DNA of 57,814 nt from the NCBI GenBank assembly GCA_009103225.1, contig RHPI01002438.1, positions 570,943-628,756 of the forward strand, written 5' to 3'. The translations under genes and the position numbers were made by a program. The notes under the pieces were generated by a model. That model did not search any database and was not told the DNA's origin. It saw only the letters and a list, made by a program, of their open reading frames with translations. This document shows, piece by piece, positions 3,987 to 56,760 of the stretch. This DNA is from Chlorokybus atmophyticus (taxonomy: Eukaryota > Plantae > Mesostigma and Chlorokybus algae). Within the stretch, counting starts at the first letter, position 1. Each line of letters opens with the position of its first letter.

Positions 3987-4726
3987 NNNNNNNNNNNNNN
4001 NNNNNNNNNNNNNNNNNNNNNNNNNNNNNNNNNNNNNNNNNNNNNNNNNNNNNNNNNNNNNNNNNNNNNNNNNNNNNNNNNNNNNNNNNNNNNNNNNNNN
4101 NNNNNNNNNNNNNNNNNNNNNNNNNNNNNNNNNNNNNNNNNNNNNNNNNNNNNNNNNNNNNNNNNNNNNNNNNNNNNNNNNNNNNNNNNNNNNNNNNNNN
4201 NNNNNNNNNNNNNNNNNNNNNNNNNNNNNNNNNNNNNNNNNNNNNNNNNNNNNNNNNNNNNNNNNNNNNNNNNNNNNNNNNNNNNNNNNNNNNNNNNNNN
4301 NNNNNNNNNNNNNNNNNNNNNNNNNNNNNNNNNNNNNNNNNNNNNNNNNNNNNNNNNNNNNNNNNNNNNNNNNNNNNNNNNNNNNNNNNNNNNNNNNNNN
4401 NNNNNNNNNNNNNNNNNNNNNNNNNNNNNNNNNNNNNNNNNNNNNNNNNNNNNNNNNNNNNNNNNNNNNNNNNNNNNNNNNNNNNNNNNNNNNNNNNNNN
4501 NNNNNNNNNNNNNNNNNNNNNNNNNNNNNNNNNNNNNNNNNNNNNNNNNNNNNNNNNNNNNNNNNNNNNNNNNNNNNNNNNNNNNNNNNNNNNNNNNNNN
4601 NNNNNNNNNNNNNNNNNNNNNNNNNNNNNNNNNNNNNNNNNNNNNNNNNNNNNNNNNNNNNNNNNNNNNNNNNNNNNNNNNNNNNNNNNNNNNNNNNNNN
4701 NNNNNNNNNNNNNNNNNNNNNNNNNG
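3987..4726. other. Assembly gap (740 N)
   Basis: Run of n. Confidence 1.
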
Positions 4727-4789
4727 GGGGGCGGGGCAACACGCAGCACATTTATGTGTCAAAGTTGGGGAAGCGGCGGCTGGGCAAAG

Positions 4790-5830
4790 ATATACAATTG
4801 CATATCAACGTGTTACTTACGGTACTCGTTGCATGCTGTAGCTATGCGTGCCACAAACGATTGTTACAGCAACACAGTAACACAGCAACACAACACACAA
4901 CACACACAAAGCATCGCGGTCATTGTGCTCAGTCCATCGCTGCCTCACACCCGGCACCGGCAGGTCATGCAGTACTTGCAGTCGTTCTTCTACTCGCGCC
5001 CCGTATTAAAACAACATCCCGTCAATCTGCATTGCAAAGCTAGCTGCTCACGCTGGTTAGTCACTGGCAATCTTGAAACAGCTGCATTTGGCGGTCATGT
5101 CTCTCCTGCAGCTGCTGCCATGCCGTGTCCAGCCTCATCGTGGTCAAAGCAGCCTCCACTTGAGGTCAGCTGCTACCTGGCTGTTGTTTTCCTATGCTTT
5201 GTTGTAGCAGCTGCCAGGTGAAGTTGTGTTCACTCAAGGTGCTTGGTACTTGATATGCAGAAGTCCCACGGGAGCAAGCTTGCGCAGAATGCTGTGCGCC
5301 TCTTAACTGCACACGAAAACGGCGTTGGTTGAGAAGAGTTGCAGCTGCTCTCAGCGCTTGATGATGTAGCCACGAGCAGTGACAATAATGGCATGCGCAA
5401 GCAGGGTTGCCTACAGTGTTGTATATTCGCAAGTGAATTGACTGCACAACAGCACCTTTTGGCCCAGAAGGTGCAGTTGTCAACGGTTGTATGCTATGTT
5501 TGTTGACGACCACATGTCGCAGCATGTTACCGCAGCTATGTCACAACACTGGCAGCACAAGCAGAGTTGGTCACCATGAAGGCATTACCCAACCGCTAAA
5601 AGTCAAGGACCGAACTCGCACTAACTAATGGCTTGCAGGACGGTACACGACCAGAACCGCTGTTCCTCAAAACGACGTCCATGCGTACTAAGATGCTCGC
5701 CTTCAACAGCCACCGTGATGACCAGCACAATGCCACTCGGGGGTGCTTGACCACTGCGTTCGGCGAGCAATTGACTTGGTCTGGGTTCGCAGCATCTCGT
5801 CGACGGTCGGCGCACGCGTCCTCACATGAG
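4790..5830 (-). pseudogene. Degenerate copy of the coiled-coil module and upstream block of the 15.2-kb gene
   Basis: Blocks alignable by eye with 17895-18570 and 15100-15800 (e.g. catatcaacg...ttgttacagcaacacagtaacacagcaacac; gtgtccagcctcatcgtgg). No long intact frame. Confidence 0.7.
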
Positions 5831-6182
5831 GTTTCTCAGCCTCTCAGCAGCCGGGCAGCAGCGGTGGCGCAGGCGACACTCTTGCTGCTCATCACTGCAG
5901 AGAGAGAGCAGGCGACTTAGTTGACAGGTTGGGTAGTTGGCGAGGTAGGTTGGAGGCGGGGGGCTTGCCGCAGTCTCGGCGAGCAATTCAGAGGGCGGCC
6001 GGTGCACACGCAAGCAGGCTATCTCCTCCCCATAAACGATGTACATGTGTGGTGCTCGTCTATTGTCAGGTCGCACTGGGCTGCTCTGGTAGCTATCCAG
6101 TCGGACTTCAGCGCAACGGTCGGCAGGAAGCATGGTTCGCGATTCTGGGAACAGACCCAAGGTGGAACCGCCGGGGGGGGGN

Positions 6183-6464
6183 GACATCTTCAAAATTCTC
6201 AGCTCGGCATCCGGCCGGCAGTCCACCTAGTGCGAAGCACAGCTGTAAGAAGACTGAGACCAGTGACAAACATACTGTGCGGTCAATATGCAGCAGAATG
6301 GCAGCGCACATGGGTGAACAACTGACCTTCGTTTTCAACTTAGCAATGACATCACCCACGGTGCGTTGTTTTGTGACCCAAATGTTCAGCACTTGCCCCT
6401 AATGATTTGGATGCTGATCAGTCAACAGAGTGCTGGTGAAGAATGACTTGCAGTAACACGGATA
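6183..6464 (-). repeat. 282-bp copy of 11287-11568 (USP7-like exons) between two G-runs
   Basis: Base-by-base reading showed no mismatch. Flanked by ggggggggn on the left and a G run on the right. Confidence 0.85.
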
Positions 6465-8452: not shown

Positions 8453-8986
8453 TTACCATAGCTTGGTTTCTTTCTTCTTGATCTCTTGCTTCCACTTGGG
8501 CAACCGGTAGAAGTCTGGCTTGGGCATGCCCAGTATCGATAGGAAGTCCTCGTCAGAAAGGAATGACTGCGAACATGTAGTTTCAGTGCCAAAGAACTTA
8601 CACACTAACATGCCGAACCAATGCCAAACAGGCGCTGCTAGCTATGTGATAGCCCAAGAACATAACGCTTCCGTGTGATTCACTTTATTCATTTATGGCA
8701 TGCAACCAACGATGCGATGCAGTGTGCGCAATGCAGTCTTCACACTTACCTCACGTTTGTGTGGGATCACTCTTGGCGGCATGGTGGGACTGCCAGCAAC
8801 CAAGTGCTCATATGCAATGGTGCCTCCACCCATGGAACTCTCAGCTCTGGTTGCTTGCGGTGCCGTGGCTGGCGGCACCCCATTGATGCTTTTGGTTGTG
8901 CTGGCTTTTGGTTCAGCTTCAATATTCAGCTTTGGAATCGCCTCTGAAGCCCGTTGTGACTTTTGTTCGGCCAGTGCTGGCATGGC
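8453..8986 (-). CDS. Villin headpiece-encoding terminal exons (8986-8750, 8566-8453)
   Basis: LSDEDF..I.GM.K..FY.LPKWKQ...KK...LW matches the VHP consensus. Phase-0 donor gag|gtaagt at 8749 and acceptor cgcag| at 8567. Missed by the ORF track. Confidence 0.85.
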
Positions 8987-11900
8987 CTACTCGCAACAGC
9001 AACATTGTAGACACCAGAATGGTAACGTGCACCCAAAAGTACCATATGCACAAGCGAATGAAAGCGCGTGCACTCGCACATGCAAACGGCCAGTGCAGGG
9101 CATGGCCTACTCGCAACAGCAACATTGTAGACACCGGAATGGTAACGTGCACCCAAAAGTACCATATGCACAAGCGAATGAAAGCGCGTGCACTCGCACA
9201 TGCAAACGCTTGTGACGGTAATCTGTGTGTATGCAGCATTGAGCACAAGTCACCTGTTGTGATTGCTGAGGTTGCTCGTAGCCAGTAGTGGCTGACGATT
9301 GAAGCGCTGGTGCAGCAGTTGGGAAAGCTATAGTTGATGCCGAGGGTGGTGACCAACTTGTGGCAAACGCAACCTCCCCTGACCCCAGCAGGAGAACTTC
9401 TTGAACCTCCCCACCGTCAAGCTTTGCAGGTGAGGAAGCTGAAGCGCTTACTGAGTGCGAAGCAGGCTCACTCGCTGCTGAGGATGGCGGTGGGCTCTGA
9501 AACATACCTGCGAAACTGCACGCTAACGCATCCAACGCTTCGGTGGATGCTGATTTCATCAAGCGAGGAGTGGTTGTAAAACTGGATTCTGGGCCAACTA
9601 CTGAGGCTGATGTAGCTGTGCTGGACCCAAGTGCTGGCCACGCAGGAACAGGGCTGGTGCTCGACCCAAAGGGCAGCGTGCTCTGCGAAAAACTTGGCCC
9701 AGTTGTTGGACTTGGTGCTGGTGCGCTGCAGAATGGCATCGACAATGGCCTGGGAGCAGCAGTAGTCGAACCAATATCGGAGCTCGGTTTGACAGTTGGG
9801 CAGCTTGACGGGGCAGATGCTTGCAAAGGTGTTGTGGATTTGAAGGCTGCGGCTAAGCTGGCGAATGCATTAGTGCTGCTTGCGAACGCTCCAAATCCTT
9901 TGTGCGGCGAACTGATTGGGAGTGGTGAAGAAGTAGAAGGTGTGATTGCATCAGATGCCATAGTAGTTAGATTGGTGGTTAGTGTAGTCGGCGGCGTAGT
10001 AGTAGTGCTGGGTAGACTAGGATTAGCAGCAGTGATGTTCGAGTTCTGAGTCGTAGCAATAAGGCCAGTAGTGGACATAGTGGCTGGACTGATAGCAGGT
10101 GCAGTACTGCTCGTGCTTGAGGTTGGACCCAATCCTGGTGCGCTGACAAGTGGCATCGACACTGGCATGGAAGCAGCAACAGTAGTCGAGCTGTAAGCCG
10201 TGCTCTGCAAATAGACAAAGCCATGGCGGAGAGATGGGTGTGAAGAATGTGCTGGCGCAGATGTTTTGAGCACTCTGATTTGCTCGCAGCAAGCTGCCAT
10301 CTTGCCTCGTTGTTGGCAAGGCATAGCAAAAACCAAATGGACAGATGCGTGAAACCCACGCCCTACACGACCTGCTTGGGTATGCACCTGGTAGGCATGT
10401 GGTCCTTTGGGCCCCACATCCGCGTGCTCCAGTCCAAGGTCGAAGTCGAATGAAAAACCGTACTTGTCTTGCCAGTGCTGAATGTTAGCACATCATATGT
10501 TATCAGCAGGGCAGTAGAATGCTGTAACATGATGAACTTCATGTTGAACATGACAGTACTCACCTGGAGTTTTGCTGCTACAACATCGGAATCCATTGCA
10601 TACTTAGGTTTGCTCATTTTCATGAATGCCAACTTGTACTGCGCACCACTAGTCAGGTGTGCACGTTGGCATGCCTGTGAAGAACACCAACTAGCAACGG
10701 CAAACAACTTGAAGAAACCGGCTGTCACCAAGCTCTGGTGATACAGTACCTTTGCAAACTCTTCAACGGGGACGCCAAGCTTGGCCTGTATCCGTCTTCT
10801 GACTTCCGCGGCCGTCTCATTCTCACGAACACACAACAAGAATGGATCCCCAAAATGATGCATCTGCACAAGATACAACAACACCCATGAGGATTGCGAG
10901 AGTAAGGTATGCCATTGAAGAGCGTCACACTTGACGCACCCAACCAGAAGGCTGCTTGGTGAAGTGTGACACACGAATCAGCCTGTCATTGGGGCCCATG
11001 TTTTTCTCATCTTCCGGGATCTGGCATGCATTCCAACCACATTTGTCACACATTGGTTCACAACAATGCATCGGGCTGCGCTTATGGCCCACGAAGGGTA
11101 TCGTTCCCTTACCTCTTCTGCGCGCCAAGTTGGGTTTTGGTATTTTAGTACTCCGAGGCTGAGAAAATCGTTAACCTCTGCATGGTGTGGCAACACCTGT
11201 TACAAGGTGGGTTAGTTTGTCACAGGAACCACCTCATGGCTTGAACTTGCAACAACTCAGGACAGACCTCGAAGATCTGGTTGAAGGACATCTTCAAAAT
11301 TCTCAGCTCGGCATCCGGCCGGCAGTCCACCTAGTGCGAAGCACAGCTGTAAGAAGACTGAGACCAGTGACAAACATACTGTGCGGTCAATATGCAGCAG
11401 AATGGCAGCGCACATGGGTGAACAACTGACCTTCGTTTTCAACTTAGCAATGACATCACCCACGGTGCGTTGTTTTGTGACCCAAATGTTCAGCACTTGC
11501 CCCTAATGATTTGGATGCTGATCAGTCAACAGAGTGCTGGTGAAGAATGACTTGCAGTAACACGGATATAGAGTAAGGCCTAGTACCTCCTGATTCTTGC
11601 CACTGTGGTAAACAATCTTGAGGGTCTTCCATCCAAGTTCTGACAGTGGAACGTCTAGCACTTCATAGTACAGAACGTCTGACACCTGTGTTGCAGAAAC
11701 ATGGAGGTGAGGTCCATCATGACTTGGCAATCAGTTGCCAAATCCCGCTGGACCTGGTATGCAGCGCTATCCCTAACGCTCAGAAGGCACACCTGGTTGT
11801 TTCGGACCAGCAAGTCCATCAGCCTGTCCACCCCGCGGTACTTGATGGGATCGGGATTGGGTGCGTGCGAGTAGCAATTGTAGGCAGTGAGCCTAACTTT

Positions 11901-14900
11901 TGAGGGGTCCGACAACTTCAGCTTCTGAGCAAGCTTCTCAACGACATCATCATAAGTATCTTGCTTCGACCTGTACACGCACATAGCGGGATCAGTGGGC
12001 AGTTGAATAGCAGCTTGTTGGCAATAGTATCTGATAGTAACGCGCCAACAGGAGTCGGAACTTACAGCTTAAGAGTGAAGTCATGCTTGTGTGGCTGATC
12101 CAGCCTCCTGAAGTTGACGACCTGCAATGCATTGAGACTCGAAGAAGGATTCCGCATAGAAGTCAGGTTGCTCCCAGCATTCCTAACGCGGTTGTGAAGC
12201 GGTGCCCATTTGAGTTGTCCTTGTGTATTGGAAGCTTGCAAAGGTGCTGTGGCTTCAAGGGCAGCGGCTGAAACTGCGAATGCATCAGTGCTGCTTGTGA
12301 ACGCTCCAAATCTTCCTTGCGGCAAACTGGTTGAACTACTTGTGATTGCATCAGATGCCATGACATTTGGATTGGTGGCTAGTTTGGTCGGCAGCGTAGT
12401 GGTAGTGATGGTTAGCCTAGGACTAGTAGCAGTAGCAACGATGGTCGAGGGCTGAGTCGTAGCACTAGAGCCAGCAGCAGTGGACATGGTGGTCGGACTG
12501 TTGGTAGGTGCAGTAGTACTGATAGTAGTACTGATAGGCGGGTTTGAGATAGGACCCGATCCTGGTGTGCTGAATACTGGCGTTGACACCGGCATGGAAG
12601 CAGTAGTCAAGCCAAAACTCAAGCTCTGCACATGGACAAATCAACGAGGGATAGGCGCGACGAACTGTGCTGGCCCACATGTTTTAGACACTCCAACCTG
12701 CTCAATCTGCTTGCAGCTAAGCTGCCATCGTACATCGTTGTAGCCAAAGCATGAACTTTACTAGTGAACGCAAGTATATAAACCCACGTCCTATGACCTG
12801 CTGGTGTACGCACCTGATAGGCATGTGGGCTTTTGGGCCCCACATCCGCGTGCTCGAGTCCAAGGTATGTATCTAAAGGACTGTACTGGTTGTGCTGCAG
12901 GACAAGCTCTACGTCAGCACCATAGAGTATTGGCAGAGTAGTGGAACGCTGTATTACGATGAACGTGACGGTCCTCACCTGGAACTCTGCTGCCACAATG
13001 TCGGAATCATCTGCATACTCCACTTTGCCACATGAAACGATTGCCAACTTGTACTGCGCACCACTAGTCAGTTGTGCATGTTATGTTCGACTCCTCAGAG
13101 CAGACACAAACTGCCAACAGCAAACAACATGACATCGGCTGTGAACAAGCTCTGGTGCAGTACCTTTGCGAAGTCCTCAGCGGGGACACCAAGCTTGGCC
13201 TGTATCCGTTTTCTGATTTCTGCAGCCGTCTCATTCTCATGGAGACACAAGCAGAACGGATCTCCAAAATTTCGTATCTGCAAAGGACACAACACGTGAG
13301 GACTGCGCATTGAAAGCCATTTGACGAGCGTCTGCGCACCATGCTGGTATGCGCCGGATCCTTGGTGAAGTGGTTCACAGGAATCAGCCTGTCATTGGGG
13401 CCCATGTTTTTCTCTTCTTTCGAAATCTGGCCCGCATATAATCCAGTCATCACACACTGGTTAACAGCAATGCATCGATCCGCTCCTATGGCCCACCAAG
13501 CCTACCTATTGTTCACATACCTCTTCTGCGCGCAAAGTCCAGTAGTGGCTGATGATGTTGTAGTCAATTTCATCATGGTGTTGGAACACCTGTTGGGTGG
13601 GTTGACTTGGTAAGGAAAACACTACATGGCTTGGTAACTGAGACTTGCAGCAACTCATGTCAGACCCTGCAGATTCGGTTGTGGACGATTTGCAAAATTC
13701 TCAGCTCTGCATCCGGCCGGAAGTCCACCTGGTCCAGAGCGCAGCATCAAGCAACTGAGACGAGTAACAAACAGATCATACGAAAAACACGCAAAGTGGT
13801 CAGCACACGGATGAGCACCTGACCTTCGTTTTCAACTTGGCAATGACATCACCCACAGTGCTTTCTTTTGGTACCCAAATGTTCAGCACTCGCCCCTAAT
13901 AATTAGTATGCTGATCAGTCCACAGACTGCTGGTGAAGAATGACTTGCAGTACCACTAATACAGAGTAAGACAGTACCTCCTGATTTGTGCCATTGTGGC
14001 AAACAATCCTGAGACTGCTCCAACCAAGTTCTGGCAGTGGAGTTTCCAACACTTCATAGTACAGAACGTCTGACATCTGCATTGCAATAACATTGAGGTG
14101 AGGTTCATTGTGAGAGACGGCATTCAGATGGCAACACAAGATGGACCTGGTTTGCGCTATGCCAAGCGCATGGGGAAGGCGCACCTGGTTGTCTTGAATC
14201 AGCAAGTCCATCAGCCTGTCCACTGCGCGGTACTTGATGGGATTGGGATTAGGTGCGTGTAAATAGCAGTTATAGGTAGTAAGCCTGATTGTTGAGGGGT
14301 TTGGCAAGTTCAGCCTCTGAGCAAGCTTCTCAACGATATCAACGTAAGTGTCTTGGATTGACCTGTGCATGTGCATTGCGGGATCAGTGTGCAATATAAC
14401 AGCAGATGCATAGTGGTGGTAACGTGCAAACAGGGGTCAAAACTCTTACAGCACAAGCGCGAACTGATGCTTTTCTGGCTTCTTAAGCCTCCTAAACTTG
14501 ACAACCTGCAGATGCGCCTGGTTTATGTGCACGACATGCAGCTTGTCAGTCGACTGAGCACCAAGTTCTCTTTGCAGCTTTCTCAATAAATAGTTCAGCT
14601 CCTGCAGCTTCGCTAGTTGCTCCTGTCTCTGCTGATCTGCTTCCTGCAACTGTGCGCTCACTCGGGCCGCCTCCTCCCGTACAGGCTGTGTAAGACCCTG
14701 TAGAAGCTTTGCTAACAAGCCGTCATGGCTATCCATCAGCACCTCAAGCTGTTCTGTGACGTGCTTGTGGTGTTCGCACCGCTCTGTTGTTGATTCCTCA
14801 GCATTCTGCAGCAGCTGCTCCTGTCTCTCCTGCAGACCTGTCATATGTGCCATCGTCCGCACATTGTGTTTCTGCTGCTCCATGGCAAAGTTCTGCAGCA

Positions 14901-15225
14901 CCTGCTCCAGCCGGCTGAGTCCAGTGCATAGCTCGTCCTGTTTCACTTGCAATGCATGCACTTGGGCATCTCGCAGAGCATCGCAGCCATGCTGTTCGGG
15001 CAACAGCTGCCTCACGCCCTGCACCAGCAGCAGCTCATGCATTGCTTGCAGTCGCGCTTCTAATCGCGCGATATGTTCCCGCTGTGTCCCCAGTAGCATA
15101 TTGCGCGTCTGCGTTGTAAATTGAGCTAGTTGCTCACGTTGCTCAGTCCACAGGCGATCTTGCAGCAGCTGCATGTGGTGGTCCTGCCTCTCCCGCAGCA
15201 GCTGCAACGCCGTGTCCAGCCTCAT
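8453..15225 (-). CDS. Predicted multi-exon chimeric protein: coiled coil - USP7/UBP12 UBL block - S/T linker - second UBL block - S/T/P linker - villin headpiece
   Basis: The exons I traced have GT-AG borders and join in frame. UBL exons match plant UBP12/13 (VVNFRRLDQPHKHDFTLKL-SKQDTYDDVVEKLAQKL...PIKYRGVD; SDVLYYEVLD; WTLRAEE-I.EEEKNMGPNDRLI; FGDPF...RIQAKLGVP.E.FAK; LGLEHAD). The last exons (8986-8750, 8566-8453) give TIAYEHL...HKRE-SFLSDEDFLSILGMPKPDFYRLPKWKQEIKKKETKLW*, a villin headpiece. Confidence 0.7.
8981..9208. repeat. Tandem duplication, period 120 bp (8981-9088 vs 9101-9208, 1 mismatch seen)
   Basis: catggcctactcgcaacagcaacattgtagacacc(a/g)gaatgg...tgcaaacg occurs twice. Confidence 0.9.
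10366..12121 (-). CDS. USP7/UBP12 C-terminal UBL exon block, copy X
   Basis: See the chimeric gene. The first exons are 12121-12066 and from 11970 (ct+g = Leu, in frame). Confidence 0.85.
12810..14505 (-). CDS. USP7/UBP12 C-terminal UBL exon block, copy Y
   Basis: Same exon series as copy X, diverged but open (VFQHHDEIDYNIISHYWTLRAEE; IRNFGDPFCLCLHENETAAEIRKRIQAKLGVPAEDFAK; YLGLEHADVGPKSPHAYQ). Confidence 0.85.
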
Positions 15226-17894
15226 CGTGGCAGCCTCCGCTTCAGGCTTCTACCTGGCTGTCGTTTGCTATGCTTCGTTACAGCTGCTAGGTAAAGTAGT
15301 CTGAACTTCCGGGGTGAGTGGTGCTTGGTGTGCACAGAGCTCCCGCCGCAGCAAGAAGCTAGGCCTGGGTGCTGTGCCTCCTAACTGCACAGGACAATGC
15401 CAGTAGCTAAGGAGCGGCTGTTGTCAGCAGTAATATGAACATGAGGGAAGACCAGCACTAATGGCACGCACAATAAGGTAACTATAGAGTTGTATGTTCG
15501 TGACTTGACTGCATAACAGCACCTTCTGGCCCAGGAATTCAACACTGTCAACTATGAATGCTTTACATGTGGTAACACGGCTACATCACAGCACTGGCAG
15601 CGCAAGCAGAGTTGCTCAGCACATATACCTCAGCACATTATGTACATATGTACATTATATCAGCTGCAACTGACCCCAAGATTCGTGCTCGCGCTGACTG
15701 GTGACTTGCACACAAAAGCTCATGACGAGCACAGCTGCCCGTCCATGCACAACAGATAAGCTGACCTTCACAAGCCACCATTCAGCACAATGCCACCTGG
15801 GGTCGCCTGAGTACAGCGTTCAACGGGCAAAACACACAGCATTCAAGGCAGCTTGCTACGCCAGGAAGCCGCCTTTGCCCAATTCCGCGAGTTGCCTTTG
15901 CGGCAGTCCCAACACTACTGCCAGCTGCAGATTAGGTAGCAAAACTTCAGAAACCTCTAGTATATCCTGCGCAGCCTGACTCCGGCAAGCTTTGGCCTCC
16001 TCCGCCTCTTCTGCTTCAGCCGCCGCCCAACCGCCGCCTGCGAGCTGGAGTGGACGGCCTGCTGCACGTGGCAGCTGAGCGTGCGCATGAGGCCAAGCTG
16101 GCACATGCGTAGCTGCTTGACGCTACACACACAAGGATCAAGACCAGACCTTAAGCAGCCGTGCCGTCCGCCGCAGCGACCCTGCAGCACTGCTTGCCAA
16201 CAGCAGCAACCAGTGCAGTCAATCGCACGCAGCCACACGGTGCATGTGCATGGGCACATGACCGCATGCTGGCAGACGCCGACAGCGTCAACGACCAGTT
16301 GGTTTGCTGTCGTCGACGGTCGGTGCACGCGTGCTGTCATCTGACTTTTGTGACATGAGGTTTTTCAGCCTGACGATGAGGAGTGTGCGGGCGTAAGCGC
16401 CAGTGTGGTGAGGGAGGGCGGGGGAAGCCTGCGTCAGCAAGTTAGGTATTGCCTGCTATGAGCTGAACCTATCACCAAGGTGATAGGCATGTGACGGCTG
16501 CACCTCATCTCCCGAGCAGCCTGTGGAGGAAAGTGTTCTTTTGCGTGCAGCTGCCTGGAGGGCCGCGGGGACGGGATGGGTCTGCTTCTTGGGCTCACAT
16601 CTTGCTGCTTAACACTGGAGAGTTGGAGACTCTGATTGGAATGGTTGACAGGTTAGGTAGTTGGCGAGGTAGGCTGGAGGCGGGGGGCATGCTGCAGTCT
16701 CGGCGAGTAGATCAGGAGGCAGCTGGTGCACACGCAAGCAGGTAGCTCCTCTCCATAACTGCTGTGTAGTGCTCGTCTATATTCAAGGCGCACTGGGCTG
16801 CGCTGGTAGCTGTCGGACTTGATTTGGGTTTATATACACACATGTGCCTGATGAGCGCAATCCAGTACAGCAAAAAGATGCACAACGCATCCATACATGT
16901 GCGTGTGCATACGAGCGTGTGTGTGCACTCGGTACGTGTGTTGCATGTGTGCTCCAGCAGTGAGTGCACTTGCGGACAATGGCTCTATTTACCCAAGAAT
17001 GGACTGCTGAAACAAACATTTGCCGTAGCTGCTGCAACGCACTGCGACCACATTATGACCGCTTGCCGGTGTGGTGCAAATGTCCACAAATAGTGTCGAA
17101 AAATGATCTCAATTTCACCATATTGACACACCTGGTACTAGTTGACTATGCTAATGAGCTGTCAGGTCAGCACAATATGCATGGTACATCATGTACCATG
17201 ATGATGTGTACCATGACATGATGTCTCCCACCCGTCTCCCATCGCTCAAAGACGACAGCAGCCTCCTACCACCCACACAAGTTCCTCTTGCCTACCCCCA
17301 CCGCGCAATCACCCTTATGTAGTGTATTCACTAAGTACACGGCGTTGGCGAAGAGACTAATACGTGATGAGCTAGATTATTGAGTGAGTGAGTCACTCAT
17401 TGACCTTTCAAAAGTTTATGGCTTTACAAATCGTACACTGCATAAGCAACACGCAGCACATTTCCACACAACACATATCAAGGAAAACACGGGCAAGGGT
17501 CCAGGAACATGTCCATGCTTAACATCCACTCAAACCATGACACCTAGCAGCGCTAGCGCACGTACACAAGGCACAGCACCACAACTGCTCACGACGCGCC
17601 CGCGAGGTCAGCGTCCTCCTCCGCCGTCGGTGGCACTGTCTGCAGCGGCGCCGAGCCCGGCACCGCCGCAACCGCTGCTGCTCCGCGCTCCAGCAGCGCT
17701 AGGCTCTGCGCCCGCTGCGCACACGCCACCCGTTGCCTACATGGCAATGATATCGCTCAAGCGGCCCAGGGCCAGGCCACGCGTGTAGACGACCTGCCGT
17801 GCGAACTTGGCAATGAGGGCGTTGAAGGCCCTCATCAGACACTCATACATTTAGGTGTTAGAGTTGGTGAACCGGCAGCCGGGCAAGATGTTCA

Positions 17895-18570
17895 ACTGCA
17901 TATCAACGTTTTACTTACAGCACTCGTAGCATGCTGTATCTATGCGTGCCATAAACGAATTGTTACAGCAACACAGTAACACAGCAACACAACACACAAC
18001 ACACACAAAGCATCGCGGTCATTCTGTTCAGTCAATGGCTGCCTCACACCCTGCACCGGCAGCAGGTCATGTATTACTTGCAGTCGTTCTTCTACTCGCC
18101 GCCTGTGTTCCCAGTGCGTGTCCAACAACACCCATCTGAGCTGCAATTTTAGCTAGCTGCTTACGCTGGTCTGTCAACAGGCGATCTTGAAGCAGCTGCA
18201 TTTGGCGGTCTTGTCTCTCCTGCAGCAGCTGCCATGCCGTGTCCAGCCTCATCGTGGGAAAGCAGCCTTCACTTCAGGCTGCTACCTGGGCGTCGTTGCT
18301 ATGCTCGTTACAGCAGCTGCCAGTAGAAGTTGCTTTCACTCCGGGTGCGTGGTACCTGGTGTGCAAAACTCCCGCGGCAGCAAGAAGCTGGGGCTGGATG
18401 CTGTCTCCTAACTGCACAGGAAATTAACATTGCTTGAGAAGAGCTGCAGTTGTCTGTCAGCGTTGATGATGATGTGGCCATGAGCAGTGGCAACAGTTGC
18501 ATGCGCAAGCAGGGTTAGCTACAGTGTTGTTTGTTCACAGGTAGGTTGACTGCCCAACAGCACCCTCTAG
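17895..18570 (-). pseudogene. Degenerate copy of the coiled-coil module (MRLDTAWQLLQERQDRQMQLLQDRLL...)
   Basis: ORF 18067-18252 resembles the start of ORF 14446-15225, then frameshifts into 17940-18146. Confidence 0.7.
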
Positions 18571-20429: not shown

Positions 20430-21021
20430 GGACTGTTGCATGCCGAGCACAACTCCAGATTGTTTGGGACTCCCCTTTGCCCAAAGGCGTAGCCTGCAAC
20501 AGCTCTGTAGCTGCCTTGGTTGGAAGCTGCTGCGCTTCCTCAATCTGATGCTCCACTCATCCCATACCCACGCAACACGTCCTTGTCGCGAGAGGTCACA
20601 ACTGCAACTCCCGGATCCAATCAATCAATGAAGCCGCGTCCCCAAGCAATGCACCCAGCAGGACGTCTGCTTGGGCAGCAGTCCAGACGTCATCAACCAT
20701 GAGCAGCACCCTCCTGTTGTGCAAGTGTCGTTAAGAAGAGCCAGTCCTCGAGCGATGGAAGTGTATGTGTTCGCTTCTCCACAAGAACTTCAAGCTTCTG
20801 CTGGTAGTAACGTTGGCCTGGCTTTGTCTGCCGCTTGCCCGACCCATAAAGCAATGGTCATTGCAACCATTGTGCAGCTGGTTAGAGTGCCTTCACAAGT
20901 GTCTTTGTAATGGCGCTCATGTCAACAAGCCGAGCGCCCTTCCTTTAGCATCAGCAGTTTGAGCGCCACTAAGACTGAGTGCTCCCAAACACCGATCAAT
21001 ACCCACAAAATTTTTGACCAC
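20430..21021 (-). pseudogene. Degenerate second NB-ARC copy
   Basis: Parallels 23000-22500: RMLLMVDDVWTAAQAD (Walker B) is kept, the P-loop is destroyed (GLLT*APL) and GLPL is lost. Confidence 0.8.
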
Positions 21022-23955
21022 TTACAAGGGAGGGTAGCCTAGACTGTTACTCACGGCGTGCACAACCGCTTGCGCTAGAGCAGCGTCATCCCAACTGAGA
21101 ATACAAACACAAATGAGTGCGCAGCACAGAACATCGGAGTAACCGTACTGCAAGAAACTCAACTCACTTGTACCGACTCAGCAGGAACCCACTGTAATAA
21201 GACACTTTGTGAATTGCTCGGATGTACCTCTCTCCATGTTCCAAGTGCCCAGGACGGCCATGCTCTTGGCATTTGCTGCAAGGCAAAACGCCACAGAATT
21301 AGGACTGCGCTTTGGAATAGGAAATAGTGCTAGTCTGTAGCTAAGTAGTATACTCACCGGATCTCTCTGAGAACCTGTTGCACTAGGTCCCCAATGCCAT
21401 GGTTTGAGATATCAATAAATATGGGCATGATCACAGCTGAGGGATCCTCCATCATCATGGCCAGCTCGTCAAGGCAATCGTAACATTCCCCAAAGTCAGC
21501 TGAGATGATGGGCATTCTGATGCGAGCGGCCTGCACACTGGCAGGGATAATATTATATGATTGGCCGGGCTTCAAGCTGTATCCACTGAAGGCACTCAAC
21601 CCTGCTCTGCTGAGACTGTCATGCAGCAAACCGATAAACTTGACGTCTGGATTTCTGTAAGTTAAGTGGATGTCATAACGCCCATAAATTACGATATACG
21701 CCTGTCGCCAAACACAGCCACAGAATAAATTGGAGACCCGTTCTTGACTGCAGCCATCGCATTCTAGTATCCGGAGCTGAGGCAGAACGCACATCGGGAG
21801 GCGACCTGTGAGGACGTTATTTGGAGTAGTAGAGCTGTGCCCTACCTTGTAGGATTGCCTCAGCGACAGATATTCCACATTTGATGTCTGCGCTCTACAA
21901 CTCTGCAAGCACAGTAAGGACACAAATGACAAATGACTAGTGGGCAACAGATGTATTTGCACGCGTACCATCGACAATAAGTCTTGAGCTTCCAGCAAAC
22001 CAACATGTGTGCCTTTGGCGCATGCAATTGCGCGCCCCATGCTGCGTAGCTGATCATGCATATACAGTTGATCTCCCCAGGTGGTCTTCTTGACATGGAC
22101 AAGGGACTTGTAGAAAAGATTTTCCAGTGTAGTGGATGCGTCTGCACGATCCTCCCAGCCAGGTGGAAGCCAGGTTGAAGAGTTAACGATGCGCCCGTTA
22201 CGCTGGACAGTCTGGCCTGTGAAACCTAGCGGAAGCCAGATTGGCGAGAGCTGACAACGCCATGGCCAGTTGCTTCCCAACGGAAAGCAGGCCATATCCA
22301 GAAACAGTCGCTGTGCAGCTGCATCAAGGCAGTCAAAACTAAGCTTAAGAACGCTCCAAAGGCCATCCACGTCTGCATTATTGAGTGGCTTCGCAGATCG
22401 CAATCTAGCCAAAGCACAGTCCCAAACATGCTGTTCGCCTTTACCACGAAGAAAAGAGCCTACCACCTGGAGCGTGAGCGGCAGCCCATTACATGCGGTG
22501 ACGAGAGGGCTCACGAACAGCTCTAGGCTGTTTGGGACTCCACCTTGCCCAAACGCGTAGTACCGGAACAGCTTTGTAGCTGCCTGGGTTGGGAGCTGCT
22601 GCACTTCCTCAATCTGATGCTCCCTCATCCCATACCCGCGGAGCATGTCCTTGTCACGAGAGGTCACACAAATGCAACTCCCGGATCCAATCACTGGCAC
22701 CTCATCCCCGAGCTGCAATGCACCCAGCAGGGCATCTGCTTGGGCAGCAGTCCAGATGTCGTCAACAACAAGCAGCATCCTCTTGTTGCGCATGTGTTGT
22801 TGTAAACGAGCCTTCCCTTGATCAATGGTGTATATGTTTGTGTTTGAAATTCCACAAAGCGCTTCAAGCAACTGCTGCTGGAGGAACATCAACCTGGCAT
22901 TATCTGCTGCTTGCCCGACCTCCACAAAGCAGTGGTCATTGAAACCATTGCGCAGCTTGTTGTAGAGTGCCTTAGCTAGTGTAGTCTTCCCAATGCCGCC
23001 CATGCCCCACAAGCCGAGCGCAACAGCCCTTCCTCCAGCAGCAGCAGTTTGAGCTCGCAACTTGACACTCAGTGCTTCAACACGCCGGTCAATGTCCACC
23101 GGGTGCTCGGCCACATACAAGGCAGGGTAGCCCAACTTGCCAAGCACGGCGCGAACCACCGATCGCGCTAGAGCAGCGCTGTCACTGAAGATACAAAACA
23201 CATCAGAGCGCGAAGCACAGGTACCAAAATGCCGATGTACACATGATGACACACAAGCTCAGACCCAACTCACTTGTTATGCTGATCCAGCCGCAACCCA
23301 TTAATGTCAAACACTTTACCAACCGCTTGGATATATCTCTTTGCACGATCTCTGTACCCAGGCTGGCCACGCTTGTGGTTTCTCCTGCCAGGGCTCACGC
23401 CATGATGCTGGATATTTGCTGCTAGTCTGCAATCAATCATCATTACAACTCACCAGATCTGTTTGAGGACGTGTTCCTTCAGTTTATGAAAATCGGGGTG
23501 GTAGAAAATGGGCATCACAGACAAGGGATCTCCCATCATTATGACCAGCTCTTCAAGGCAGCAGTAAGAATCCCCAAAGTTGACGGAGATAATGGGCATC
23601 TTGATGAGAGCGACCCGCAGATTGGCAATAATAACCTCCCACGCTGGGTCAGAGGGTTTTAAATTGAGCTCATCAACAAAGCCGGTCAACCCCGCTTTGA
23701 CGAGACCGTTGTGCAGGAAACTAACGAAGTTACGCTTGACGTCCGGGCCTCTGTGACTCAGGAAAACGTCACAAGGCGACAACCCAGCGCAATTAATGGT
23801 CGTCAACGGCGGTGCAGTTTCCTCTGTACTACTGGATTCCTTATATTGTCGCAAAAGGCAGTGACGCACAAATCGCACAAAGGCAAAGGCAGTGATGACG
23901 AGGAAAGCTGCGTAAGGTATTACTGTCAATCAGCGATAACAACGACAAACGCCAT
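21022..23955 (-). CDS. Hydrophobic-leader TIR-NB-ARC-TIR protein (TNL-like, essentially no LRR)
   Basis: TIR1: CDVFLSHRGPDVKRNFVSFLH...CLEELV. NB-ARC: GLWGMGGIGKTTLA, LLVVDDIW, VTSRD, CNGLPLTL, LKLSFDCL, LFLDMACF, MHDQLR. TIR2: YDIHLTYRNPDV...CLDELA. Small alphaE exons (RYIQAVGKVFDING; RYIRAIHKVSYYSG) splice in frame. Stop TAA at 21024-21022. The ATG at 23955 is one frame off the leader. Confidence 0.85.
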
Positions 23956-54620: not shown

Positions 54621-55169
54621 GCCTAATAGTAACGGAAGTTACTATAAGGTCCCTGTATCAAGATTACAGGTGGACTGAGCCACGACAGTCTAAATTAGTG
54701 TCCTCAGGTGCACGGCCGTTGCCAATATTTAGCCGGCCGGCAGGGAAAACATATTGCGACGAATGCGAATCAGTCTTGCTTGCACTTCATAATTTGGTGA
54801 CCCTTTTTGCTACAGTCATAATCAAAGTTCATGGCTTGGCTCCAACTATTCTGTTTGTTCTGGAGCTTTTGTCGTGGCATGTAGGAATTTAAAGTTGCCC
54901 GATCATAAGTGCCTTGGGTTTCCATTTCGCACCGCGGCAAAGCCTTGTGTTATTGCTTTTTGCATGAAGCACACGCACAGAGGCTCTTTAATTTGGAACA
55001 TCTAAAGCTTGACTCACCTAGTCTCAAATTAAATTGTTCGCCTCGCTGTCTTGCCATCATATTGCCCCGTCTCTGGGTATTTATTGATCTCAAGCAAGTT
55101 TCAGATAGGCTGACTTGACTCAAAATGAAATCGATCAACACAATCCTGTGAGGAAAGGTGTTGATATGT

Positions 55170-56760
55170 TTGTAAACGACCACATGTCGCAGCATGGTAA
55201 CACGGCCATGTCACAGCACAGCCAGCACAAATATTGTTGATCAGCGCATATGCATTGCCTGACAGCTAAGCTTGCAATCATAATGGTGGCTTGCACACAA
55301 ATGGCACATGACCAAAACCGCTGTTCCTCAGAAAATAATCCATGCGCAACAAGATGCTCACCTTCAACAGCCACCGTGGTGAACAGCACACTGCCTCTTG
55401 GGGGTGCTTGTTAACAGTAGAGTGGCAACTGTACTCTTCTGAGTACTTATACTCTGTCAAATACGGAAAATGTGGAAAAAGTATCACGCTTTGTGCAACA
55501 TGCTTTGTGCAACATGTACTCAAAATTTCCATAGGTTATATAAAAATTCAATTGCTTAGATTTATTGGCAACAAATGGAGCACCCCCGGAGTTTCAAACC
55601 ATACCATCATTGTCAGCTCATGATCCAGTGTGTAAACGTGAAGAGCACATGTCATTTCAAGCATATAAAAGGCAAGTGGTCTTGCAATAACATTAATGCA
55701 TGCTAACAAGCATATACCCGGTATATGAGATTCATTAACACGCTCGTATTTCGGTTGGTGGCGTTGATAGTTGATAATACCATGGCACGCGCAGGCCCGA
55801 GCTGTATACCCACAGGCACATTACTATTGCTTACAGAACACTTGTATGTCAATTGACTTGACCATGAATCTTCACATTTCTACACATCATACGAAATGCT
55901 CTCGTTAGAGGGTGTGGTTTTTGGAGCAGCTTTAATGTAGCATGTTTCCGAAAGTTCATTGTAACAGTACCTATTTGAGTTACAGTACCGGCCAGCCTAG
56001 TGTTTAAGGCACTGCGGAGCTTGCTACGCGAAAAGCCGTGTTTGCTCAAGACCGCGCGAGGTGCTTGCACGATAAGTTTTGATACATTTGCCACAAGCGG
56101 GTTACTCGCAAGTGTCTGCCAATCTAGCTGAACCATATGCAACTCTCTGATTTGTTGTTCTATGCGCAGCAACACTTCAGTTTGCATAACACAGCACTGG
56201 CTCTAGCAACTTCCGCCTCCTCTGATTTTGCCGCCCACCTGCAGCCTGCGAGCTACGGCGGACAGCTTGCTCTATGTCACATCTAGTACAAGCTAAACGT
56301 GCGCATGAGGTCAAGGAAGCTGAACGTGCGCATGAGGCTGGCACATGCCTAGCTACTTGCCAAGTGACTCTTCACGCATACACATACAGCTGACAAGATC
56401 AAACCACTAGCACTGCTGTGTTGCATCCGTGCCATTTGCCGCAGGACTCTGCATCAGGCTGTTTTACCAACAGCAGCAACTAGTGCAGTCCACCGCACGC
56501 AGCCACATGATGCATGTGTATGATGTGTGAGCACATGACCGCATGCTGGCAGACGCCGACAGTGTCAGCGCTTAACCAATTGACTCGGTCTTAGCTTCGC
56601 ATCTTGTCGACAGTCGGCACACGCTTCATGTCGTCACACATATGATGTTCCTTGTTAACACTACTGAGGGTGTGGGCGTGCACTGTGAGGGAGGACGGGG
56701 TGAGGGCGCGGGCGGGGGCGGGGCAAACGTGCGCCTTCAAGTTAGGGTTTTGCCTGCTGT
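55170..56760. repeat. Further diverged copies of modules at 5.5-5.8 kb and 15.5-16.5 kb
   Basis: Shared strings such as acatgtcgcagcatg, ctcaccttcaacagccaccgt, cacatgaccgcatgctggcagacgccgacag and caagttaggg...tgcctgct. Confidence 0.7.

What the first reader, a model, noticed from the sequence alone, without database searches (positions are those of the whole stretch)
8453..15225. Apparently intact chimeric gene: tandem USP7 UBL blocks without protease, ending in a villin headpiece
Seen: two diverged copies of the UBP12/13 C-terminal exon series both keep open frames and GT-AG sites. The native C-terminal tail is replaced by S/T-rich exons, the N-terminus is a coiled coil, and the final exons encode a villin headpiece. 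Established: USP7 UBL domains bind partners and regulate the enzyme, and VHP binds F-actin. Inference: a new adaptor or decoy that could tether USP7 partners to actin. I know of no such architecture, but I could not search.
Basis: partly seen in the sequence, partly recalled or inferred. Interest (0 to 1): 0.8.

Follow-up and report, generated by a model that had tools for sequence, protein, structure and literature searches.

The report
Protease-less USP7-Ubl gene ending in villin headpiece
An alga's genome holds an unannotated 23-exon gene that joins a coiled coil, two copies of the last three ubiquitin-like domains of the deubiquitinase USP7/UBP12 (no protease part) and an actin-binding villin headpiece; its reading frame has been kept by selection, but nobody has shown that it is expressed or what it does.

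Summary
On the minus strand, 15225-8453, I could build one 23-exon model. All 22 introns are GT-AG, the CDS is 4332 nt (1443 aa) and it has no internal stop.

The parts are:
- a helical N-terminus
- two Ubl3-4-5 blocks of UBP12/USP7, each followed by an S/T-rich linker; this is a 2.4-kb tandem duplication with 74% DNA identity
- a complete villin headpiece (Pfam VHP, 1.3e-14)

No MATH, USP catalytic or Ubl1-2 sequence occurs anywhere in the 57.8-kb window.

Both blocks have been kept open by selection:
- dN/dS in the Ubl part is 0.52.
- All 8 exon indels are multiples of 3, against 7 of 24 in the introns.
- No stop is present where 7-9 are expected.
- All homologous splice dinucleotides are conserved.
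- Both copies have diverged from plant UBP12 to the same degree.

Weak points:
- No RNA run was listed, so expression and the junction to the headpiece exons are untested.
- No public protein matches any part of the gene.
- A very recent 122-bp tandem repeat duplicates the acceptor in front of the headpiece exons.

The proposed role, tethering USP7 partners to actin, is poorly founded. The known partner sites (TRAF, Ubl1-2) and the activating tail are missing.

Verdict: a real, lineage-specific, exon-shuffled gene with a new domain architecture and unknown function. This scan holds no earlier finding of it on other DNA.

The parts
14450..15225 (-). Exon 1. ATG at 15225. Residues 1-236 are predicted as long helices (coiled-coil-like). 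Residues 237-258 are the first strand of Ubl3 of block X. The donor is CT|GTAAGA.
   Evidence: no Pfam family, no homologue, only generic coiled-coil look-alikes
12814..14362 (-). Block X, exons X2-X10, encoding Ubl3-4-5 of UBP12/USP7 type: 14362-14185, 14076-13978, 13895-13824, 13728-13666, 13589-13521, 13426-13340, 13277-13164, 13053-12979, 12894-12814.
12066..12625 (-). Exon X11/Y1. It encodes the S/T/A/P-rich linker of block X and runs in frame into the first strand of Ubl3 of block Y. The tandem-duplication junction lies at about 12131/12130. An optional 66-nt in-frame intron lies at 12187-12122.
10388..11970 (-). Block Y, exons Y2-Y10, the second Ubl3-4-5 copy: 11970-11793, 11685-11587, 11502-11431, 11330-11268, 11196-11113, 11020-10940, 10863-10750, 10638-10564, 10477-10388.
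9254..10204 (-). Exon Y11, a 317-codon S/T/A/P-rich linker. The first ~130 codons are homologous to the X linker; the distal 188 codons are unique.
   Evidence: the 951-nt frame was open in 0 of 20000 shuffles; no Pfam family, no homologue
8968..9208 (-). 122-bp tandem repeat (97.5% identity) inside the last long intron. It duplicates the acceptor and the first 19 nt of exon E12. Use of the upstream acceptor (exon start 9106) would meet TAG at 8989-8987 and lose the headpiece.
8750..8986 (-). Exon E12. It encodes the linker end and the N-terminal subdomain of the headpiece, ending in ...PHKRE.
   Evidence: by eye it resembles the LPxGVDxxxKE motif of villin HP67 (from memory, not tool-tested); no PDB or database hit on its own
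8453..8566 (-). Exon E13. It encodes the villin headpiece C-terminal subdomain (36 aa) and the TAA stop at 8455-8453.
   Evidence: Pfam VHP 1.3e-14; villin-1, villin-4 and advillin headpieces in PDB

Best explanation
This is a lineage-specific, exon-shuffled, protein-coding gene. An earlier unchecked note of this scan names the organism as the streptophyte alga Chlorokybus.

Origin.
- A genomic copy of the 3' part of a UBP12/USP7-type gene, with its introns, came to lie behind a coiled-coil exon.
- It covers the enzyme from the residue aligned to the Ubl2/Ubl3 hinge (human H792) to about human residue 1093.
- Downstream of it lie a villin-like S/T-rich linker and headpiece exons.
- A 2.4-kb internal tandem duplication then doubled the Ubl3-4-5 block together with its linker.

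Inferred product. A 1443-residue non-catalytic scaffold. The helical N-terminus probably oligomerises. Two rigid Ubl3-4-5 modules sit on disordered S/T-rich spacers. The C-terminal headpiece would anchor the protein to F-actin.

What is shown: the exon structure, the domain identities, the absence of protease parts in the window, and selection for an open frame in both copies.

What is inferred: splicing to the headpiece exons, oligomerisation, actin binding, and any ligand of the Ubl modules. The only documented contact of Ubl45 is the weak one with the USP7 catalytic domain. The best functional guess is therefore a local modulator or docking site for the cell's own UBP12 at actin, not a decoy for its substrates.
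For: Gene structure.
- The model is intact, with 22 GT-AG introns and no stop.
- The intron position after ...YNQ is shared with a plant UBP12 fragment that retains that intron (P0002). This points to a DNA-level copy, not a retrocopy.

Selection on the frame since the X/Y duplication.
- dN/dS of the Ubl part is 0.52, bootstrap 95% CI 0.37-0.75.
- All 8 exon indels are multiples of 3, against 7 of 24 in the introns. The Ubl exons carry 3 indels where about 22 are expected at the intron rate.
- Simulated neutral substitution at the observed divergence gives 7-9 stops, with P(no stop) below 0.001.
- All 40 aligned splice-site bases are conserved although intron identity is only 73%.
- At positions conserved in outgroups, both copies keep the outgroup residue at 86, only X keeps it at 9 and only Y at 10. 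Neither copy is the free-running one.

Internal control. The two extra copies of the gene's first 83 codons, at similar divergence (79-81%), are frameshifted.

Domain content.
- The VHP scores twice the Pfam cut-off.
- No MATH, UCH or Ubl1-2 match occurs in the whole window.
Against: - No RNA run holding the stretch was listed, so expression and every junction remain unverified.
- No public protein matches exon 1, the linker exon or E12.
- The best match of the Ubl exons among 1.84 billion representatives is a 52%-identical plant UBP12 fragment. The gene is therefore not in the gene sets searched.
- dN/dS of 0.5 is relaxed, and the linker evolves neutrally (1.1).
- The join of Y11 to E12 rests only on matching phase and canonical sites. 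E12 has its own in-frame ATG at 8983.
- The 97.5%-identical repeat offers a competing acceptor that would truncate the protein before the headpiece.
- Ubl45 binding to the catalytic domain in trans is very weak: the apparent KD for trans activation is 110 uM, and activation needs the tail that is missing here (PMC6335408).
Confidence: 0.5

Rival explanations
1. The gene is real and selected but carries no headpiece. The protein is coiled coil plus 2 x Ubl3-4-5 plus an S/T-rich tail. It ends either at the read-through stop at 9107-9109 or at TAG 8989-8987 after use of the duplicated acceptor. The headpiece exons would then be a separate small gene starting at the ATG at 8983 (about 115 aa) or a leftover of a villin 3' end.
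For: - The frame stays open 48 codons past the proposed donor at 9254 and stops at 9107-9109.
- E12 begins with an in-frame ATG.
- The intron 9253-8987 is the longest of the gene (267 nt), and its acceptor is duplicated 120 nt upstream at 97.5% identity.
- No transcript evidence exists for the junction.
Against: - In the proteins I know of, the headpiece sits at the C-terminus of a larger protein (my own knowledge).
- The 50 residues of E12 before the headpiece are linker-like, as is the end of Y11.
- The donor at 9254 and the acceptor at 8986 are canonical and both phase 0.
- The 48 read-through codons change abruptly from S/T/A/P-rich to Cys/His-rich junk.
- No public 53-170-aa protein matches E12.
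Confidence: 0.22
2. The gene was selected in the past but is now silent or dying: an unexpressed relic in a duplication-rich and transposon-rich region.
For: - No RNA run was listed and no public gene model or fragment was found.
- Constraint is relaxed (dN/dS 0.52; linker 1.1).
- The surroundings hold decayed fragment copies of the gene's 5' end and a 100% identical 282-bp piece of block Y.
- The very recent acceptor duplication could be a first lesion.
- Earlier notes describe broken genes and transposons nearby.
Against: - Not one stop, frameshift or lost splice site occurs in 4.3 kb of CDS and 22 introns.
- Neutral decay at this divergence gives many lesions, and it visibly broke the neighbouring fragment copies.
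- Absence from the databases searched does not show silence.
Confidence: 0.22
3. The chimera is an assembly or model-building artefact: collapsed or mis-joined contigs, or chance open frames stitched together.
For: - Single N's and a 739-base gap lie nearby (6182; 3987-4725).
- A 100% identical 282-bp copy of Y4-Y5 abuts the N at 6182.
Against: - No N lies within 8453-15225.
- The two blocks differ by 26% at the DNA level, so they are not a collapsed repeat.
- Exon boundaries fall at homologous positions in both copies and align colinearly with UBP12.
- The 951-nt linker frame was never open in 20000 shuffles.
Confidence: 0.04

Closest known systems
UBP12/UBP13 (plants) and USP7/HAUSP (animals) deubiquitinases
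   Same: Each block aligns colinearly with the last ~300 residues (P0008 806-1102; about 50% identity to plant sequences). This is the Ubl3-4-5 region, starting at the residue aligned to the human H792 hinge. At least one intron position is shared with a plant UBP12.
   Different: There is no MATH/TRAF domain, no USP catalytic domain and no Ubl1-2. The last 9 residues of the activating tail are replaced by a splice donor leading into an S/T-rich exon. The block is present twice and is embedded between a coiled coil and a headpiece.
Villin-family headpiece proteins (plant villins, villin-1, advillin, supervillin, dematin, abLIM)
   Same: The gene has a full-length C-terminal VHP preceded by a long disordered linker, as in plant villins. 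The best PDB matches are villin-1 and Arabidopsis-type villin-4 headpieces. The W, K and KKK...L residues of the C-terminal helix are present (by inspection).
   Different: No gelsolin repeats, LIM domains or other usual partners were found in the gene or its flanks. The last residue is W rather than F.
Protease-less USP7-Ubl fragments and fusions in plant gene sets (for example P0013 Ubl345 + PEARLI-4, P0024 Ubl123 + DUF659, P0015 kinase + Ubl fragment)
   Same: These show that copies of UBP12 3' parts get duplicated and fused to other sequences in plants.
   Different: None of the 150 nearest representatives has a VHP, this coiled coil or this linker. Those models are unvalidated and may be annotation artefacts, whereas here frame conservation between two diverged copies argues for function.

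Membership tests
USP7/UBP12 deubiquitinase family | USP (UCH, PF00443) catalytic domain | tested here: not met
   tblastn of full-length P0008 against the whole window finds nothing for residues 1-805. No UCH hit on any exon or ORF piece.
USP7/UBP12 deubiquitinase family | N-terminal MATH/TRAF substrate-binding domain | tested here: not met
   No match in the window. Exon 1 is helical and has no Pfam family.
USP7/UBP12 deubiquitinase family | Ubl1-2 partner-binding di-domain | tested here: not met
   Only USP7_ICP0_bdg profile positions ~177-241 of 241 are matched. The blocks start at the residue aligned to P0008 N804, which is human H792.
USP7/UBP12 deubiquitinase family | Ubl3-4-5 (end of USP7_ICP0_bdg plus USP7_C2) | tested here: met
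   Present twice, colinear, with 86 of 134 outgroup-conserved positions kept in both copies.
USP7/UBP12 deubiquitinase family | C-terminal activating peptide (human 1083-1102) | tested here: not met
   Both blocks end at ...PHAYQ, aligned to about human 1093. The final ...KPVKIYN-type residues are absent and replaced by the linker exon. The role of the tail is taken from PMC6335408.
Villin/gelsolin family | Gelsolin-homology repeats | tested here: not met
   No gelsolin Pfam hit on any exon, ORF piece or flank scanned. The flanks were scanned only as open pieces of 75 aa or more.
Villin headpiece domain (PF02209) | Score above the Pfam gathering threshold over the whole profile, at the extreme C-terminus | tested here: met
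   54.3 bits against 27, profile 1-36 of 36, followed directly by TAA.
Villin headpiece domain (PF02209) | F-actin binding | not testable with these tools
   The conserved W, K and KKK...L residues are present by inspection of the alignment. Binding needs a co-sedimentation assay.

The most novel reading that the evidence does not exclude
An expressed, selected, actin-anchored and oligomeric protein that displays four or more protease-less USP7 Ubl3-4-5 modules. It would be a new kind of cytoskeletal docking or regulatory factor for the UBP12 deubiquitinase, or for still unknown Ubl3-5 ligands. It arose by exon shuffling in one of the earliest-diverging streptophyte algae.
Probability: 0.25. 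Interest if true: 0.65.

Novelty: new variant of a known kind. Interest (0 to 1): 0.45.

Why it matters
If it is expressed, this is a clean natural example of a new gene made by exon shuffling. It combines a domain-exact copy of a deubiquitinase's regulatory module, an internal tandem duplication and an actin-binding cap, and the traces of selection are still readable because the two copies can be compared with their own introns.

It would also be a natural separation-of-function construct. Ubl3-4-5 is present without the catalytic domain, Ubl1-2 or the activating tail. That could show whether these domains have ligands of their own, which is not settled for USP7/UBP12.

If it is not expressed, it is an ordinary young relic in a duplication-rich region.

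Tried and rejected
RNA evidence. The look-up of sequencing runs listed no run, so read laying could not be used. None was listed, which does not mean none exists.

Public models.
- The representative search with X2-X3 gave only plant UBP12-like proteins of 59% identity or less.
- Word searches with exon 1, the 461-aa linker frame and the E12 frame gave nothing. Each sees only proteins of 0.55-1.75 times the query length.

Other blanks.
- PDB sequence searches with single Ubl exon pieces and with E12 were blank.
- The Atlas look-alikes of exon 1 were generic coiled coils scoring under 0.9.
- Searches of this scan's findings by sequence and by words (villin, USP7, headpiece, gelsolin) were blank.
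- Papers holding both 'villin headpiece' and 'USP7' were irrelevant.

Readings rejected.
- 'One constrained copy plus one free copy' is rejected, because the relative-rate count is symmetric (9 against 10).
- A retrocopy origin is rejected, because introns are retained.
- More upstream exons carrying the protease are rejected for this window.

Joined model. The joined spliced protein was built only inside local scripts, for translation, alignment and dN/dS. It was not sent to any search, family, fold or complex tool. Whole-protein InterPro-style scans, an architecture search and a fold of a Ubl3-4-5 block were therefore left out.

Full report
**1. What is there**

The window is eukaryotic, about 52% G+C, with short GT-AG introns. 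An earlier, unchecked note of this scan (s1-194268) names the organism as the streptophyte alga Chlorokybus. The plant-type UBP12 and villin similarities fit that, but I could not verify it.

I read the minus strand from 15400 to 8200 and built one model of 23 exons from the ATG at 15225 to the TAA at 8455-8453. All 22 introns are GT-AG and 62-267 nt long. The CDS is 4332 nt, giving 1443 residues with no internal stop. Its 12188/12121 junction is a possible 66-nt in-frame intron, but the frame is open straight through it, so either form codes.

**2. Domains**

- **N-terminus.** Exon 1 (259 aa) has no Pfam family and no homologue of 142-453 aa. Its Atlas look-alikes are generic coiled coils under 0.9. 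It is predicted as two long helices, residues 2-73 and 81-224, mean pLDDT 72.
- **Ubl blocks.** From residue 237 the protein aligns with the C-terminal 300 residues of UBP12/USP7, and it does so twice.
  - tblastn with a full-length plant-type UBP12 (P0008: MATH, UCH, USP7_ICP0_bdg and USP7_C2) matches only its residues 806-1102. The matches lie at 14508-12823 and at 11999-10552.
  - Exon-by-exon Pfam scans by reference give colinear partial hits in both copies: ICP0_bdg 190-241, then USP7_C2 2-27, 35-55, 100-126 and 125-161.
  - Block X starts at the residue aligned to human H792 (via P0008 N804). One paper describes this residue as the pivot of the Ubl2/Ubl3 hinge (PMC4457826). Each block is therefore a complete Ubl3-4-5.
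  - Both blocks end at ...PHAYQ, aligned to about human 1093. The last nine residues of the activating tail are replaced by a donor site leading into an S/T/A/P-rich exon.
- **Headpiece.** The last exon is a full villin headpiece: Pfam VHP 1.3e-14, 54.3 bits against a cut-off of 27. PDB matches are villin-1, villin-4 and advillin headpieces. The preceding exon ends in a sequence that, by eye and from memory of HP67, resembles the N-terminal headpiece subdomain. This was not tool-tested; its PDB search was blank.
- **What is absent.** Nothing in the 57.8-kb window matches the MATH, catalytic or Ubl1-2 parts. The flanks hold no Pfam domain.

**3. The duplication**

14515-12234 matches 12130-9819 at 74% identity over 2397 nt, introns included. 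The unit comprises the Ubl3-4-5 exons and the first ~130 residues of the linker, and the junction is in frame. The ancestral gene was therefore coiled coil, Ubl3-4-5, linker, headpiece.

An intron after ...YNQ is shared with a plant UBP12 fragment that retains it (P0002). The Ubl block therefore arrived as genomic DNA, not as a retrocopy.

**4. Is it a living gene? The two copies test each other**

| Test | Result |
|---|---|
| dN/dS, Ubl part | 0.52 (bootstrap 95% CI 0.37-0.75), dS 0.39 |
| dN/dS, linker | 1.1 |
| Identity, exons against introns | 79.5% against 73.1% |
| Indels in introns | 24 in 942 aligned nt, 7 of them multiples of 3 |
| Indels in exons | 8 in 1262 aligned nt, all multiples of 3 |
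| Indels in the Ubl exons alone | 3, where about 22 are expected at the intron rate |
| Stops under simulated neutral substitution | 7-9 expected, P(none) below 0.001; none observed |
| Splice-site bases | all 40 aligned bases identical |
| Outgroup-conserved positions | both copies keep 86; only X keeps 9; only Y keeps 10 |

- At the intron ratio of 7 in 24, the chance that all 8 exon indels are multiples of 3 is about 5e-5.
- At 27% intron divergence, the chance that all 40 splice-site bases stay identical is about 4e-6.
- The symmetric outgroup count rules out one constrained copy beside one free copy.
- The window holds an internal control. Two further copies of the gene's upstream region plus first 83 codons lie at 17847-18564 and 4748-5456, at 79-81% identity. 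Both are frameshifted.
- The 951-nt linker exon was never open in 20000 shuffles.

I conclude that the reading frame through both blocks has been under selection for most of the time since the duplication. Constraint on the amino-acid sequence has been relaxed.

**5. What remains open**

- **Expression.** No sequencing run was listed for the stretch, so read laying could not be used.
- **Public models.** The exhaustive representative search with exons X2-X3 found no protein closer than 59%. All hits looked like ordinary plant UBP12 or fragments of it. None of the 150 nearest has the coiled coil, the linker or a VHP. Word searches with exon 1, the linker frame and the E12 frame found nothing. 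The locus is therefore unannotated in what I could search. That also weakly suggests low expression.
- **The link to the headpiece.** This is the least secure junction. It rests on canonical, phase-matched sites and on the linker-like nature of E12. E12 has its own in-frame ATG at 8983. A 122-bp tandem repeat (9208-9087 / 9088-8968, 97.5% identity) places a twin of the acceptor at 9106. Its use would run into TAG at 8989-8987 and remove the headpiece.

**6. Mechanism**

The published contacts do not favour this.

- An ICP0 peptide binds Ubl12 and shows no binding to Ubl345 or Ubl45 (PMC4457826).
- Ubl123 serve as the platform for GMPS and DNMT1 (PMC6335408).
- Ubl45 fold back on the enzyme's own catalytic domain. 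They bind it weakly without the tail and help ubiquitin binding. Activation needs the tail, and in trans it has an apparent KD of 110 uM (PMC6335408).

This gene keeps exactly the part that talks to the catalytic domain, and it lacks the activating residues.

My best guess is inference only. The protein would be an oligomeric, actin-anchored scaffold whose Ubl3-4-5 modules give weak, avidity-dependent docking for the cell's own UBP12 or for unknown ligands. Two short islands conserved between the otherwise neutral linkers, MASDAIT and (R/G)FGAF.SST.AFA, may be linear motifs.

**7. Novelty and verdict**

The domains are known. I found this combination (coiled coil, 2 x Ubl3-4-5, VHP) neither among the nearest 150 representatives nor in the paper search. 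A proper architecture search on the joined protein was left out, because the operators allow only exon-by-exon searches by reference. The joined model was used only in local scripts.

I class it as a new variant of a known kind: a real, probably functional, lineage-specific chimeric gene whose expression, headpiece junction and function are untested.

Noticed in passing
window 8968-9208: A 122-bp tandem repeat at 97.5% identity sits in the last long intron. It duplicates the acceptor and the first 19 nt of the exon before the headpiece. The upstream twin (exon start 9106) leads into TAG at 8989-8987. This is either a very recent event or an assembly stutter.
   Followed up: partly
window 17847-18564 and 4748-5456: Two decayed, frameshifted copies (79-81%) of the gene's upstream region plus its first 83 codons. 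Both continue into a TG-rich stretch that the gene lacks. 5433-5573 and 5920-6094 are colinear with 15500-15618 and 16644-16811. So the gene's 5' end and about 1.6 kb upstream were duplicated segmentally, and exon 1 may itself be a mosaic.
   Followed up: partly
window 6183-6464: A 282-bp stretch 100% identical to 11287-11568 (exons Y4-Y5 with their intron) that abuts a single N at 6182. It is likely a scaffold-join artefact or a very recent fragment copy.
   Followed up: no
window 12234-12400 and 9819-9990: Inside the otherwise neutrally evolving S/T-rich linkers, two short islands are conserved between the copies: MASDAIT and (R/G)FGAF.SST.AFA. These are possible linear motifs. Sparse FG dipeptides in an S/T-rich context recall FG-type low-complexity regions.
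   Followed up: no
window 20449-21000 and 22517-23093: A 583-bp direct repeat at 78% identity lies next to or inside the TIR-NB-ARC gene noted by others.
   Followed up: no
window 16155-16290 / 56423-56567 and 5488-5749 / 55159-55410: Short dispersed repeats (76-82%) are shared between the gene's flanks and the far end of the window. They are probably transposon debris.
   Followed up: no
window 3987-4725: A 739-N assembly gap lies directly downstream of the 4748-5456 copy of the gene's 5' end. If that copy belongs to a paralogue, its body is hidden in the gap. No further match to the model lies below 3987.
   Followed up: partly
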